Assembly (NCBI GenBank): GCA_001179505.1
Contig: CDMY01000113.1
Location: 1 to 64,000, forward strand
Reading direction: 5' to 3'
Length of the DNA stretch: 64,000 bases
Source of the DNA: Vitrella brassicaformis CCMP3155
Taxonomy: Eukaryota > Protista > Chromerida
In this document: positions 37,444-62,400 of the stretch, one piece after another
How positions within the stretch are numbered: position 1 is the stretch's first letter
Layout of the letters: each line of letters begins with the position of its first letter
Position numbers and translations under genes: made by a program
Notes under the pieces: generated by a model
Database searches by the model: none
What the model was told of the DNA's origin: nothing
Seen by the model: the letters and a program-made list of their open reading frames with translations, nothing else

Positions 37444-40237
37444 GGTATCTGTGTCTCTGTCTCTGTCTTAGGCGACCAATTGCTGCCTTCATTTTATATT
37501 TTGGCGTCGATTTGTTCCATGTCTCCGCGCGGATGCTGAAGGGGTCGACTCTCAATAGCAGGGAGGCCCCCAAAGGTCACTTGTCGAGCGGCTCGGTGGG
37601 CCCCCGAGGCTAGCGAGATAAGGACAAGGCTAGCGAGTTCCTCATGGAATCTGCTCAGGAGATGGTAGGAAGGGTGGGAGGGGGAGGGAGGAAGGTGGAA
37701 AAGAGAAAGGGGGACGTCATATGCATGTCTCTCCGGCTGCATGTTCTCCATATAACTGCCGCGGCTTGGTCTGCTCTGGTCAGGTTAGCATTGGTGTCTC
37801 CTCGAGCGCATCGCAGCCCCAGGCGCACGGCAGCCGTCGTTCTTGCTACAGCGGTATCAACATGGACGCCGTCTTCACCGGTGGGTATGAGTGGACGGAC
37901 TCGCATGCGTGGATGAATACATGACAAGTTCTATCGATGGATCCGTGTGTGCAGACGGCAAGGGCAAGAAGCCGCCCAAGGGTGCGGCCAAACTGATCCT
38001 CAACGCCACCATGGCATGCATACCACGCACACACACACAACACAATACAACACAACACAACACGACACAGCAAATCACCAACCTGCCTGCCTGCCTCCCT
38101 GTTCACCCACCCACTCCCAACTCCTCCACTCGCGTTGTTGGCTGTGTGTGTGTATGTGTGTGTGTGTGTGTGTGTGAGTGCAGCCGGAGGCCATGTGAAA
38201 GGACCAACTACCTGCAGCGCAAGGCAATCGACCGCCAGCAGCGGGAGGAGGAGAAGGCCGCCATCAGGGCTGAGAGGGAGAAGAGGGAGAAGAGGGCACT
38301 TCACCAAGTGACTGAGTGAGCTTGTCATGCACAAAGGCAATGGGCGGACAGATATTATGTCGTGTGCCTGCGTGTGTCAGGTCTGCACATCGCTGCCTCC
38401 GTTTTATATCTGTCAAGACCTATATTTGCATTGCTCGGCACTCTATGACGTCTCACTCCGACTGCCCCCTCTATCTTCTGTCCACTCTGAGGTGAGAGAG
38501 GGAGGGAGGGGGAGGCCTGGATGGATGGATGGATGAACATGGACGTGTTGTGTCGGGTCATCAGAAGCACGTCATAGCGGGAGACGGGTCACCTGACGAG
38601 CTGCGGATAATCGAGCAAGAAAGATAAGCCGCCTCATGAGCACACGACAGGCACTATCGAGACAGTTTCACTTACACTCTGTTGGTTGTGTAATGTGTTC
38701 AGCTCCACCCATGTGGCCAAGCTGCCTCACGTCAGCGGCATCGTATCAGCAGCGCTCAAGCTGTTCGTCCTCCCTGACGACTGCGCCGAACCGCTGCGAG
38801 GACTGCAAGCCATCGTCACAATTGGCAATGGAGTTTCCGGTGAGGAAAGGCCGGGACGAGTGTGGGTCTGTCTGTCATTCCCCTACCTATGTGCGGGTGC
38901 AGGGATTACGTCGAGAGCGGCGGTGCAGGCGATGATGGCTGGCTGGGCGTCCCATTTGTGCGGCCCTATTGCGCTGCGCCACCCCACGTGCAGCCCTCCT
39001 ACACCCCGCGAGGCGGTGTGGTGCGGGGCGTGGGAGGCCTTCCCCATTGCGTTCACCCCCCTCCCCACGTCCCGCCCCCAATCGTGCCGCTCCGTCGCGC
39101 CCATCCCCCGCCCTACGTCCCGCCCCCGTTCGTGCCCCTGCCAGCACCAGCCCTGCACCTGCCCCTCCCACTCCAGCACCCCTTCCCTCCCCCTCCCAGC
39201 AGCACCACCTCGCCGCGCCCTGCCCTCACCTGCAGCCGCACCAACCCGCCACGTCCCTCTTCCCTCACGGGCAGCACCACCACCACCGCACTTCCCCATG
39301 CCGCCCCCCACCATGGTGCCGCCGATGCGGCTCCTGAGGAGGGAGGAGTCACCCGAGCCGAGACGCTGCTGCTGGTGGCGGTGAGGACTGAGTGCGGCCT
39401 TGGGGGTCCCCGCCTCATCAAGTTGATGAGGTTCACGGGAACGATCCGTGCCCCGGGGTAGAGTGGGCGGCAGCCCTTTCATGGTGGCGGCAGCAGTTGG
39501 TGAAGCAGCAGGTAGGGACGGCGAGATGTGGGCAGCCCGACGCAGATGGGTTCTACGACGCCAGGAGTGCCACCAAGTCGTCGGTGGACCGCCTCATCAC
39601 GGAGGTTCACGGGGCGGGTCAGGGGGGCCAAGCAGGACTGTTGGATGCGATTCGTGAGTGGGGCTGTGTTTGTGCGAGTGTGTGTGCAGGTCGCTCGACG
39701 GATTGTTGTCTACATTTTATATTTGGATGTCTCGGGCAAAAAATGACCGTGCTTCGTGTGCAACGAGCAACGGGAGCTGCCATGGTACGAAGATACATGT
39801 AACAGAGACAAGGACGTGACATCAATGGGCATGTCGCATGTGTAATGTGCGAGGCAGCTGCCGACCCCGCCCCAGTGCCGGCCCTTCACGGAGACCCTGC
39901 TGCCCTCAGAAAGGCCCCAGCCACCACCGAGGCCGTCATCAGCCGCACCGCCACCTGCAGCAGCACGACCGTGGCGCCAACCCCCGCCCTCCGCCTGCCA
40001 GTCGGCGTACCCCGTCTGCTCACTGTCGGCTGCCCTGCTGATCGCCCCACATATGGACCACCCCGACGGCAGCAGCGCGAACACAGAGATCTACGGGGAG
40101 GCGAGGGCGTTTTTTGTCGAGAGCAGCGACGGCCAGGCGCTCTACGACAGACACTTTCGTGCGAAGGTGGAGGGGATGACGGACGCGGTCACACATACAC
40201 ATATACACATACACACACACACAGAAGTACGCAGAGA

Positions 40238-40537
40238 NNNNNNNNNNNNNNNNNNNNNNNNNNNNNNNNNNNNNNNNNNNNNNNNNNNNNNNNNNNNNNN
40301 NNNNNNNNNNNNNNNNNNNNNNNNNNNNNNNNNNNNNNNNNNNNNNNNNNNNNNNNNNNNNNNNNNNNNNNNNNNNNNNNNNNNNNNNNNNNNNNNNNNN
40401 NNNNNNNNNNNNNNNNNNNNNNNNNNNNNNNNNNNNNNNNNNNNNNNNNNNNNNNNNNNNNNNNNNNNNNNNNNNNNNNNNNNNNNNNNNNNNNNNNNNN
40501 NNNNNNNNNNNNNNNNNNNNNNNNNNNNNNNNNNNNN
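40238..40537. other. Assembly gap (300 N)
   Basis: N run between duplicated blocks. Confidence 1.
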
Positions 40538-60554: not shown

Positions 60555-61183
60555 AGAACACTGGTCGCTGGTGTTGGGCCCTGGCGCCGAGCTGGATGGA
60601 GAGGGAGGCGGAGACGACCAAGCCGAGGCGGAGGAGGCGTCACGAGAGGGGGGAGGGGAGGGGGAGGGAGACGAGGAGGAGCAAAACGAGATTATCGAGG
60701 GCTGGTTCAACCTGCGGGGCGAGATGCGTGAGGATGGGCTGCTGCGGGGGGAGGGCAAGGGGGAGGAGGTGCTGATCGGCGAGCCGAGTGTGTCGTACGG
60801 CCTCGGGATGATCAACTTGCCGCCATCAGAGGCCGCCCACTCATCGACACCGTCATGGAGATGGCAGGGCCAGAAGCCGACCCGGAGAGGATGGAGCTGC
60901 TCATGGGGATGGAGTGGGAGGAGGCGCGGAGCTCCTTTATGACCGACACAGGCCAACCCCTGCACCACGGGCAGCCTTCTCCGGCTGTTGAACCGTGTCC
61001 TGAGGGCCATCTCGTGCATCTGGGGCTTCTGCACCCCTCGGTCTGCGGAGGAAGTGTACCTCATAGAAAAGCTGGGCGAGGCAGTGAGTCCTTGTAATGT
61101 ACCAAGCGCCGCATACGCTTTCACAATCTTTTCTCTCTCTTGTTCTTGTTGTGTGCAGGTTGTGCATGCGGGCTGTCGTCGGT

Positions 61184-62400
61184 CATCGATCGCCGCCTAC
61201 ATTTTATATTTGCATGTCTCGTCCGACATTCGGCTACGTTCTCACGGCCTTTCACGTCGTTGAGAGACGCCAGCAGATGAACACCGGCAGGGCGGAGAGG
61301 GCGGGGGATGCCGCCCCAATGGAGAAGTCGAGTCGTCCAACAAGAAGTTGAAACGTCGAGGAAGACATCTTGGCCGTCCAGTGCCGCCCACCCACACAGC
61401 GCCCTCCCAGGGTCAGGAGCTTTCCGATGCCTCGCCCAACAGGGTGCTCGACTCCCGACGTCGCCGAGCTGCCAAACCCCTAACCGCCCTCCTAGGGTCA
61501 GCCGTCCATGATGATGGAAGATGCTCGGGGCGGCGGCCAGGCCTCCCGTGCTAAGAGGGCCATCCAGGCAGAGAAAAAGACGTCAGGCCAGGGGGTGGAG
61601 GAGGGACACCGGCAACAGGGAAAGGAGGACGGCGTAGAGTCGCCGCCAGCCAAGAGGGCCAGAGCAGAGCAGGTCGGCGTCAATGGCTCGACAGCGGCAG
61701 CAGCTGCTGCTGCTTCTTCCCAGGACCACACTGCAGCAGCCCCCGCCCCTCTCTTGACCAACGTGGCCAGCAAGGCGCCCCCTGCCAACAGAGCCGCCAT
61801 GGCCGCCGAACCTGACGCCCACATGGCGCCGGCAGACAGCAGCGGGGAGTCGACCCCCAGGGCGGAGACCACACCCTCGATCCCCTGCACATGCCAACCT
61901 TACAGACAGGTGAGAGACACACGCACGCCTCACATGTGTACATGCGTCCTTTGATGAATGCTTTGTCTTGGTGTGTGCAGGCGGTTTCTGGTCACGTGTG
62001 AGAAGCAAGCAACGTCTCTTCACGTTACCTCCAGAAAGCAGCGTGTTGGCGACGTCGTCCACAGCGCATACGATTCCCTCCTCGCCACCACCCCCAATCC
62101 AATCTCGGTCAGTCCTCGGTCAGTCGGCCGGCCATCACACATTCATCGCAATCGACACACGGCCACCCATGTGAATGCGTCTCTGTCCTGCCTTCAGACC
62201 TTCAGACGCGCATCACACGAGTCATCTCCAAGAATGTCTTCCCCCCGCAGTGGCGTTGAGATCGATCGCCGCCTACATTTTATATTTGCATGTCTCGTCA
62301 GACATTCGGCTACGTTCTCACGGCCTTTCACGTCGCTGAGGGACACCAGCAGCTGAACATCGGCAGGGCGGAGAGGGCGGGGGATACCGCCCAAATGGAG
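61184..62400 (+). repeat. Duplicated ~140-bp module 61184-61324 ~ 62260-62400 starting at the motif
   Basis: Both begin ATCGATCGCCGCCTACATTTTATATTTGCATGTCTCGTC; the upstream flanks are unrelated. Confidence 0.9.

What the first reader, a model, noticed from the sequence alone, without database searches (positions are those of the whole stretch)
37478..62288. Co-oriented ~25-nt motif punctuates the accessory region into 0.8-3.6 kb cassettes (integron-like or shared-exon array)
Seen: 17 + strand copies of GATCGYYGSCTNCATTTTATATYT, 3 degenerate copies, and one - strand copy (1244-1270) inside the inverted outlier. I saw none in the 3.4-30 kb housekeeping block. The core TTTTATAT is unchanged in 15 of 17 copies although the flanks fall into about eight subfamilies that barely align, and it is strongly AT-rich in GC-rich DNA. 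All but the 57649 copy lie 0-30 nt after an AG resembling a splice acceptor. The intervening DNA carries unrelated cargo (novel module genes, J-like, kinase, CBM20, low-complexity ORFs). Inference: the motif is a functional joint, either (a) a recombination/insertion site for cassette shuffling, (b) an RNA-level signal for splicing, trans-splicing or 3'-end formation in a co-oriented array (TTTTATA resembles the yeast polyadenylation efficiency element TTTTTATA), or (c) a shared core promoter element (the reverse strand reads TATAAAAT). No cognate recombinase is visible in this window.
Basis: partly seen in the sequence, partly recalled or inferred. Interest (0 to 1): 0.88.

Follow-up and report, generated by a model that had tools for sequence, protein, structure and literature searches.

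The report
Invariant 24-base gene-boundary signal
In the alga Vitrella, runs of fast-changing genes that point the same way and are silent in the RNA data I could reach are separated by an almost unchanging 24-letter non-coding signal; it most likely marks where one gene's message ends, but no RNA data could be brought to bear.

Summary
The window is Vitrella brassicaformis CDMY01000113.1:1-64000. It carries 17 + strand copies and one - strand copy of the 24-mer, against none in shuffles, and no intermediate-scoring copies. The scan met the same signal before on other DNA of this genome (s1-205481, s1-248769).

I found 15 more copies on five stretches of four contigs (one is this contig, just past the window end), all co-oriented with neighbouring genes. 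Across 21 independent flank families the 24-mer is 81% identical, while the flanks are at random level (25-28%). It is not a peptide tag: stops and a 1-nt indel follow it, and AT-ending third positions never vary.

It is bipartite, with a CATGTCTC box 5 or 20 nt downstream. It is often abutted by a 3' splice site or a Vitrella-type intron.

It is tied more to the 3' side of units:
- 5 copies lie in convergent spacers and none in divergent ones.
- 14 genes have it within 300 nt after the stop, against 4 before the start.
- It brackets the kinase-like homology unit exactly.

Array genes lack the usual GCGAGCT upstream motif. The 53.0-58.6 kb stretch tested is absent from two RNA runs.

Best reading: a sense-strand gene-end signal. 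Promoter, operon-like and recombination readings remain open. No transcript evidence was obtainable.

The parts
1245..1268 (-). 24-mer copy (family A'), the only - strand copy. - strand ORFs lie on both sides (2217-1390 upstream, 1166-171 downstream).
   Evidence: its flanks from -27 to +88 are 90% identical to the 37478 copy
37478..37501 (+). 24-mer copy, family A, first of the + array. The upstream + ORF stops at 37443.
38388..38411 (+). 24-mer copy, family B (CGTTTTATAT variant)
39701..39724 (+). 24-mer copy, family C; CATGTCTC-type box at +5
40974..40997 (+). 24-mer copy, family C duplicate (period 1273, across gap 40238-40537; may be an assembly effect)
41861..41884 (+). 24-mer copy, family D. 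Its first G completes a CAG that ends a 55-nt intron-like element (41807-41861).
43634..43657 (+). 24-mer copy, family E; a stop follows directly in frame 1
44802..44825 (+). 24-mer copy, family B duplicate (segmental duplication)
46322..46345 (+). 24-mer copy, family D duplicate
47709..47732 (+). 24-mer copy, family E duplicate (TTCTATAT variant), 78 nt after the end of an annotated CDS (47631)
51281..51304 (+). 24-mer copy, family F, in the middle of a roughly 350-nt stretch without coding signal
52315..52338 (+). 24-mer copy, family G1 (TTTAATAT variant); module from about -95 to +96 shared with G2
53682..53705 (+). 24-mer copy, family G2 (starts TAA)
54478..54501 (+). 24-mer copy, family H1. 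It directly follows an 88-nt AC/TG-type intron-like element (54390-54477) and is followed by another (54557-54651).
56121..56144 (+). 24-mer copy, family H2. It directly follows a 70-nt intron-like element (56051-56120) whose donor is the one used in the annotated model. It marks the 5' edge of the kinase-like homology unit.
57649..57672 (+). 24-mer copy, family H3, 28 nt after the end of kinase-like homology; no acceptor upstream
61188..61211 (+). 24-mer copy, family I1, 246 nt after the CBM20 gene's CDS end
62264..62287 (+). 24-mer copy, family I2. Homology with I1 and I3 breaks 3 nt before the motif.
42001..42024 (+). Degenerate copy (GATCGCC start) right after an acceptor-like CAG. Similar ones start at 43785 and 47860.
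37518..37526 (+). Second box, CATGTCTC(S)G. It lies about 20 nt after the 24-mer here and at 54519-54527 and 57690-57698. It lies about 5 nt after the 24-mer at 39727-39734, 53708-53715 and 61213-61221.
56290..57638 (+). Kinase-like homology unit (P0001 aa 284-634), bracketed by the 56121 and 57649 copies
33393..33400 (+). Last TGCGAGCT (general Vitrella upstream motif) before the + array; none occurs in 37-64 kb

Best explanation
The 24-mer is the invariant head of a short, portable, non-coding module. The module is the 24-mer, then 4 or 19 nt, then a CATGTCTC box, and it is often directly preceded by a genuine Vitrella-type intron or 3' splice site. It is read at the nucleotide level on the sense strand.

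It belongs to the 3' side of the unit upstream of it. I think it marks the gene end: it opens the last short exon or 3' UTR segment and directs 3'-end formation or termination, or another 3'-UTR-based control, of the upstream gene. The AT-rich TTTTATAT core would be the recognition element.

The genes concerned are fast-evolving, co-oriented orphan and kinase-like genes; the one stretch tested is absent from both RNA runs.

Shown:
- the conservation pattern;
- the strand lock;
- the non-coding nature;
- the position relative to annotated genes and to homology units;
- the association with an upstream splice site.

Inferred: that it acts in RNA, and that the act is 3'-end formation.
For: (1) All 33 copies on the window and five further stretches share the strand of the neighbouring genes.

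(2) Context of 25 copies against annotated CDS: 5 are in convergent spacers (+M-), 0 in divergent ones, 7 in tandem spacers, and 10 inside + gene models. Two convergent spacers (window 64736 and L011) leave under 300 nt before the opposing gene's stop, so there is no room for a downstream gene.

(3) 14 genes have a copy within 300 nt after the CDS end against 4 within 300 nt before the start (p=0.03).

(4) Five of nine kinase-like paralogs (30-40% protein identity) carry a copy 28-493 nt after the kinase unit. Two of them (L002, L011) have copies only downstream.

(5) Family homology of P0001 runs from aa 284 to about aa 634, exactly between the 56121 and 57649 copies.

(6) Upstream intron-like elements and abutting AGs are enriched. 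Downstream ones are not (10 of 27 against 29%).

(7) The 24-mer is 81% identical across 21 families, against 25-28% in the flanks.

(8) Vitrella's median intergenic distance is 92 bp (PMC4501334), so compact boundary signals are plausible.
Against: - I obtained no transcript evidence. The runs laid were DNA, and the two RNA runs hold none of 53.0-58.6 kb.
- 24 nt is far longer than any known poly(A) signal, and ordinary Vitrella genes do not use it.
- The motif is more often linked to its right flank than to its left flank in pairwise comparisons. That fits a terminal exon but equally fits a 5' unit.
- The 54478 copy sits in an exon-like piece with good intron-like elements on both sides.
- Array genes lack GCGAGCT, so they need some other promoter.
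- The last + gene of the L008 array has no copy after it.
- The second box occurs inverted in two families, which favours DNA-level recognition.
Confidence: 0.45

Rival explanations
1. 5' element of the downstream gene. The module is a specialised core promoter, with TTTTATAT as a TATA-like box and the CATGTCTC box about 26 nt further on as the start site. Alternatively it is a conserved 5'-UTR leader exon of a co-regulated, stage-specific gene class.
For: Array genes lack the general GCGAGCT upstream motif (0 of 23 against 18 of 40, p=7e-5), so the two motifs are complementary. Candidate ATGs lie 37-60 nt after several copies. The motif and its right flank travel together with different left flanks (H3, I2, L002). 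The TATA-to-box spacing in the +20 class is promoter-like.
Against: Five copies in four loci sit in convergent spacers with no downstream gene, and none sits in a divergent spacer or upstream of the first gene of an array. Copies are nearer to upstream stops than to downstream starts. The +5 class of the second box breaks the TATA-to-start spacing. An acceptor or intron abutting a promoter is unexplained.
Confidence: 0.22
2. Each array is one long transcription unit: operon-like, or a gene with many alternative 3' cassettes. It is driven from a normal promoter at its head, and the module is the inter-unit processing site, so it serves both the end of one unit and the start of the next.
For: GCGAGCT or TGCGAGCT is found before the first + gene of the arrays (window 33393, L009 Thg1 gene, L011 7397 gene) and not inside them. 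All units are co-oriented. Acceptors abut the motif. Annotated models already run across 10 copies.
Against: No spliced leader or other capping route for downstream units is known or seen in Vitrella. Half of the acceptors have local donors 55-100 nt upstream. No frame is kept through the motif. No RNA data were available.
Confidence: 0.12
3. 3'-UTR or exon-borne target of a trans-acting RNA or RNA-binding protein that silences or stabilises this gene class. This would resemble the conserved 16-mer of trypanosome VSG 3' UTRs or a plant-type small-RNA site.
For: The conserved stretch has sharp edges at 22-24 nt. The 3' half is invariant and the 5' half is more variable. Most variants are transitions. 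The 53.0-58.6 kb stretch is absent from two RNA runs that hold 44-49% of the words of the housekeeping block. The only family member with a transcript on record lacks the motif nearby.
Against: No antisense small-RNA source was seen. The inverted second box suggests DNA-level reading. Silence was measured on one stretch only.
Confidence: 0.1
4. Recombination joint: a site-specific (integron-like) or homology-driven crossover point that shuffles unit-plus-site cassettes.
For: Unrelated units are each followed by the site, including the last one. Homology breaks within 3 nt of the motif's 5' edge for H3 and I2. One segmental-duplication edge falls on a degenerate copy (43785 and 47860). Flank types are recombined in a mosaic.
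Against: The motif has no dyad symmetry or inverted-repeat arms. I saw no recombinase, HUH or RT domain among the ORFs scanned. Most duplication edges lie 40-160 nt from the motif. The strict lock to the transcription strand and the link to splice sites point to RNA. There is no match in viral or metagenome collections.
Confidence: 0.07
5. Relict spliced leader from recycled cDNAs (dinoflagellate-style), or a translated peptide tag (DRCLHFIF).
For: Length is 22-24 nt with sharp edges, an AG abuts some copies, and a degenerate second copy lies downstream in families D and E. Variable positions 6, 9 and 12 are third positions of frame 1.
Against: Units contain introns. Orphan copies lie at array ends without a gene body. 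No spliced leader is reported for Vitrella. For the peptide: stops follow within 0-36 codons in frame 1, one copy starts with TAA, and D and E differ by a 1-nt indel right after the motif. Third positions 15, 18, 21 and 24 are invariant AT-ending rare codons in a GC-rich genome, and no frame is consistently open upstream.
Confidence: 0.04

Closest known systems
Conserved 16-mer of Trypanosoma brucei VSG 3' UTRs, with the 70-bp repeats of silent VSG arrays (from my own knowledge; not tested here)
   Same: A short, AT-rich, nearly invariant non-coding element sits at the 3' side of each member of a fast-evolving, co-oriented, mostly silent gene array. It also marks the edges of recombining cassettes.
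   Different: The units here are unrelated to each other, contain spliceosomal introns, and lie inside ordinary contigs. No expression site or switching is known. The organism is free-living.
Eukaryotic cleavage and polyadenylation signals: yeast UAUAUA efficiency element, plant FUE/NUE/CE layout (from my own knowledge)
   Same: An AT-rich core lies in a UG-rich upstream context, with a U-rich stretch and a CA shortly downstream. It sits after stops, on the sense strand only.
   Different: 24 invariant nucleotides are far more than any general poly(A) signal. It is used only by one class of genes. Ordinary Vitrella 3' flanks show only mild T-richness.
Integron attC sites and cassette arrays
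   Same: Co-oriented, unrelated, apparently promoter-less units are each followed by a conserved site, and the last unit is also followed by one.
   Different: It is eukaryotic and intron-containing. The site has no inverted-repeat structure. No integrase was seen. The site is tied to splice sites.
Relict spliced leaders of dinoflagellate genes (recycled cDNAs; from my own knowledge)
   Same: A shared sequence of about 22 nt with sharp edges, preceded by AG, co-oriented, and sometimes in tandem with degenerate copies.
   Different: Units keep their introns. Copies occur after the last gene of an array with nothing downstream. No SL RNA gene or trans-splicing is known in chromerids.
Oomycete Inr/FPR 19-nt core promoter and other long protist initiator motifs (from my own knowledge)
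   Same: A long, orientation-locked, CATTT-containing motif lies close to gene starts in a compact genome.
   Different: Those motifs are found at most genes and in divergent spacers. This one is absent from divergent spacers and from housekeeping genes, which carry GCGAGCT instead.

Membership tests
Integron-like cassette array (attC-type site) | Site with imperfect inverted repeats or dyad symmetry that folds as a hairpin | tested here: not met
   The 24-mer has no inverted-repeat arms. Folds of six modules give z-scores from -1.95 to +1.28 and no shared structure.
Integron-like cassette array (attC-type site) | Cognate tyrosine recombinase next to the array | tested here: inconclusive
   16 ORFs of the window were scanned against Pfam. 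Only a kinase-like domain was found. I did not search the whole contig.
Integron-like cassette array (attC-type site) | The same cassette appears in different contexts with breakpoints inside the site | tested here: inconclusive
   Two breakpoints fall at the motif's 5' edge (H3, I2). Most others lie 40-160 nt away.
Spliced-leader relict or SL trans-splicing | SL RNA gene: leader followed by a GT donor and an Sm site, usually in tandem arrays | not testable with these tools
   The whole genome could not be scanned. There is no Rfam hit in the window, and no paper reports an SL in Vitrella.
Spliced-leader relict or SL trans-splicing | The relict sits at the 5' end of a complete (retroposed) gene body | tested here: not met
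   Five copies have no gene downstream. Units contain introns.
Cleavage/polyadenylation or termination signal | Lies downstream of stop codons on the sense strand, including in convergent spacers | tested here: met
   14 genes have it within 300 nt after the stop against 4 before the start. Five copies are convergent and none divergent. All are co-oriented.
Cleavage/polyadenylation or termination signal | Transcript 3' ends map shortly downstream | not testable with these tools
   The only read-laying run returned DNA contigs. The RNA runs hold none of the array.
Core promoter (TATA/Inr type) | Present upstream of first genes and in divergent spacers, at a fixed distance from the start site | tested here: not met
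   There are no divergent-spacer copies, and none lies before the first + gene of six arrays. The spacing of the second box is bimodal (+5 or +20). Start sites themselves are untested.
Protein-coding tag (DRCLHFIF) | Open frame kept through all copies and synonymous variation at third positions | tested here: not met
   There are stops, a TAA start and a 1-nt indel. The AT-ending third positions are invariant. No consistent upstream frame exists.
Introner, MITE or Helitron-type mobile element | Similarity along the whole element, with terminal repeats or hairpin and target-site duplications | tested here: not met
   Between families, similarity stops within 0-5 nt of the 24-mer on both sides. 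No TIR or TSD was seen at the G and I module edges.

The most novel reading that the evidence does not exclude
The arrays are a eukaryotic form of cassette organisation. Unrelated, promoter-less units would be strung behind one ordinary promoter. Each would be closed by a portable 'splice-acceptor plus 24-mer' module that works as a dedicated inter-unit processing site, or as the crossover site by which units are added and shuffled. This would be an operon- or integron-like system in a chromerid, the free-living sister of apicomplexan parasites.
Probability: 0.12. Interest if true: 0.9.

Novelty: new variant of a known kind. Interest (0 to 1): 0.6.

Why it matters
Vitrella is a free-living relative of malaria and Toxoplasma parasites, and its genes are packed about 92 bp apart. 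How such genomes mark gene ends and starts is unknown.

A 24-nt, strand-locked, almost invariant signal confined to fast-evolving orphan and kinase-like gene arrays would be an unusually long and specific gene-boundary element. It offers three things:
- a way to correct gene models, since at least 10 annotated models run across it;
- a handle on a gene class that was absent from the RNA data I could reach and may be stage-specific;
- a direct test of whether chromerids have any operon-like or cassette-type gene organisation.

No paper in the searchable library mentions the sequence.

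Tried and rejected
RNA evidence:
- The single read-laying run (51200-57199) went to runs labelled '?'. 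These proved to be DNA (contigs up to 225 kb, colinear through introns). The one RNA run laid nothing.
- The second run search served only as a positive control. RNA runs X5 and X6 hold 0.49 and 0.44 of the words in 16-26 kb, against 0.00 (X5) in 53.0-58.6 kb.
- Look-ups of family proteins returned only the reference genome. One MMETSP fragment belongs to a paralog (P0014) whose locus has no motif.

Searches outside the genome:
- Viral and metagenome scans for the motif found nothing.
- Rfam on the window found nothing.
- RNA folding of six modules showed no shared structure.
- Literature searches for a Vitrella spliced leader, transcription starts, introners and the motif string itself found nothing relevant.

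Readings rejected:
- Peptide tag, rejected on stops, an indel and invariant rare third positions.
- Mini-introns of 28-36 nt upstream of some copies, rejected as real introns because the annotated introns I reconstructed are 64-464 nt.
- Downstream donor sites as a defining feature, rejected because they are at background frequency.
- Helitron, MITE or LINE-tail origin, rejected because similarity ends at the motif edges.

Other points:
- I noticed that the AT-rich core matches the budding-yeast ARS consensus and set it aside as coincidence.
- Pfam on 16 ORFs gave only the kinase-like hit.
- I could not scan the whole Vitrella genome. All extra copies come from loci chosen through the kinase-like family, which biases the sample towards that family.

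Full report
**What the window is.** A kinase-like ORF of the window (56290-57720) led to the annotated protein CEL92806.1 of Vitrella brassicaformis CCMP3155. Its locus shows that window coordinates equal coordinates of contig CDMY01000113.1. Earlier scan notes also name Vitrella.

**The observation.**
- The consensus GATCGYYGSCTNCATTTTATATYT matches 17 times on the + strand between 37478 and 62287, and once on the - strand at 1245-1268. None of 100 shuffles gave a match.
- A family-weighted PWM is bimodal. The 18 copies score 37-49 bits and nothing else in the 64 kb exceeds 12 bits.
- The + copies fall into nine flank families because 38305-43791 and 44718-47866 are segmental duplicates.

**Assembly gaps.** The three gaps inside the finding cannot be bridged with what I had.
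- DNA immediately right of two of them is 100% identical to DNA elsewhere in the array.
- Copy number and three cassette lengths are therefore uncertain.
- Gap 45372-45671 probably hides another copy.
- None of the conclusions below depends on continuity across a gap.
- Logan contigs of three DNA runs reproduce the 51.2-57.2 kb part. They break or branch exactly at the motif, which shows that it is dispersed in the genome.

**More copies elsewhere.**
- The kinase-like family has 13 representatives in the 1.8-billion-protein library, and all the named ones are from Vitrella.
- I fetched their loci. This gave 14 further copies on four stretches of three other contigs, plus one just beyond the window end at 64736.
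- The 12-mer YRCATTTTATAT occurs 12 times in those four stretches. Every occurrence is on the strand of the neighbouring genes.
- Three family loci have no copy (L006, L007, L012).
- No match exists in IMG/VR or the JGI metagenomes.
- No paper holds the sequence.
- The scan had met the same signal on two other pieces of this genome (s1-205481, s1-248769).

**Nature of the conservation.**
- Across 21 families with unrelated flanks, mean pairwise identity is 81% in the 24-mer. It is 25-28% in the 24-nt windows around it and 32% in the window just downstream.
- BLAST alignments between families stop within 0-5 nt of the motif on both sides.
- The excess just downstream comes from a second box, CATGTCTC(S)G. 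It lies at +20 in eight families and at +5 in four. It is inverted (GAGACAT) in two families.
- The motif is not coding. In the proposed frame, stops follow within 0-36 codons. One copy begins with TAA. Families D and E differ by a 1-nt indel right after it. No frame is consistently open upstream.
- Third positions 15, 18, 21 and 24 are invariant although they make AT-ending codons in a GC-rich genome.
- A codon-usage profile shows a coding-free zone around each copy.
- No shared RNA fold exists, and there is no Rfam hit.

**Relation to splicing.**
- Introns reconstructed from four annotated family genes are 64-464 nt long and end in TG-rich tracts plus CAG.
- An AG abuts the motif start in 7 of 21 families, against 13% expected (p=0.016).
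- An intron-like element of 45-140 nt ends within 50 nt upstream in 12 of 27 copies, against 21.5% of random positions (p=0.006).
- Several of these elements show the AC-rich 5' part and TG-rich 3' part that another note describes for Vitrella introns.
- Downstream intron-like elements are at background level (10 of 27 against 29%).
- So the motif tends to open an exon-like segment. It is not regularly followed by an intron.

**Which side it belongs to.**
- Of 25 copies with annotated neighbours, 10 lie inside + gene models, 7 in tandem spacers, 5 in convergent spacers and none in divergent spacers.
- In two convergent cases, fewer than 300 nt separate the copy from the stop of the opposing gene.
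- Fourteen genes have a copy within 300 nt after the CDS end, against four within 300 nt before the start.
- Homology of P0001 to its paralogs begins at aa 284 and ends near aa 634. That is exactly the stretch between the 56121 and 57649 copies.
- The same layout, kinase unit then motif, recurs in L002, L009, L010 and L011. The proteins there are only 30-40% identical, and L002 and L011 have copies only downstream.
- These points tie the motif to the 3' side of units. They also show that several annotated models fuse separate homology units across it.

**What argues the other way.**
- The general Vitrella upstream motif GCGAGCT (other notes) precedes 18 of 40 non-array genes and none of 23 array genes. 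In the window, TGCGAGCT occurs six times in 8-33 kb and never in 37-64 kb. Array genes therefore either start at the module or are transcribed from the head of the array.
- The motif is more often linked to its right flank than to its left.
- The 54478 copy has good intron-like elements on both sides.
- The inverted second box suggests DNA-level recognition.

**Expression.**
- Two RNA runs hold 0.49 and 0.44 of the sampled words of the housekeeping stretch 16-26 kb.
- One of them holds 0.00 of 53.0-58.6 kb, and the other was not even listed for that stretch.
- The only family member with a transcript on record, P0014, has no motif within 10 kb.
- This stretch of the array thus looks silent in culture. 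It also means I have no transcript evidence of any kind.

**Verdict.**
- The 24-mer is a real signal. It is strongly selected, strand-locked and non-coding, and it forms a bipartite module at the boundaries of units in co-oriented arrays.
- I commit to a gene-end function for the upstream unit, either 3'-end formation or termination or a 3'-UTR control element, at about 0.45.
- The rivals, in order, are a class-specific promoter or leader exon (0.22), an inter-unit processing site of one long transcription unit (0.12), a target of a trans-acting RNA or protein (0.10), a recombination joint (0.07), and a relict leader or peptide tag (0.04).
- The integron analogy is not supported by the site's anatomy, but layout alone does not exclude it.

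Noticed in passing
window 8772-33400; loci L002, L005-L011: GCGAGCT or TGCGAGCT (in either orientation) lies within 250 nt upstream of 18 of 40 ordinary genes and of none of 23 array genes. In the window all six TGCGAGCT copies lie in 8-33 kb. This supports the other readers' idea of a general promoter-proximal motif and shows that a gene class lacks it.
   Followed up: partly
window 54839-58450 (CEL92806.1) and 50683-54084; L009 10001-12443; L010 5661-8525 and 10001-12113: Annotated gene models run across 10 motif copies by treating them as intron sequence. P0001 fuses three homology units (aa 1-283, 284-634, 635-724). These are probably over-merged models.
   Followed up: partly
window 39265-39564 = 40538-40837; 41249-41548 = 45672-45971: 300-nt stretches that abut assembly gaps are 100% identical to stretches elsewhere in the array, while the surrounding duplicates are only 88-98% alike. 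This could be a gap-filling or scaffolding artefact, or a recent conversion tract.
   Followed up: no
3' flanks (300 nt) of 49 genes without the motif, loci L001-L011: TGAGT, AGTCA, TCAGT, TGGGT and GGGTG are 2-3 times enriched after stop codons. Examples are (TGAG)n and (TGGG)n runs, as at window-contig 64870-64900 and L002 12590-12650. This may be a general 3'-flank or spacer feature of Vitrella.
   Followed up: no
window 53000-58600 versus 16001-26000: Two RNA runs hold 44-49% of the words of the housekeeping block. For the accessory array one run holds none and the other was not listed. The array appears transcriptionally silent in the cultures sampled.
   Followed up: partly
window 52409-52966 versus 54839-55495: Two paralogous orphan ORF bodies (71% protein identity, 87% DNA identity) sit behind different module families (G1 and H1). 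This is one example of the mosaic make-up of the array.
   Followed up: partly
L011 10-1237 (- strand) versus L011 11580-13267: A large - strand gene (1629 aa, CAMSAP_CKK hit) carries a 46-54% identical copy of aa 413-786 of the kinase-like protein P0010, which is encoded 10 kb away. The kinase-like unit therefore also exists fused into bigger genes without the motif.
   Followed up: no
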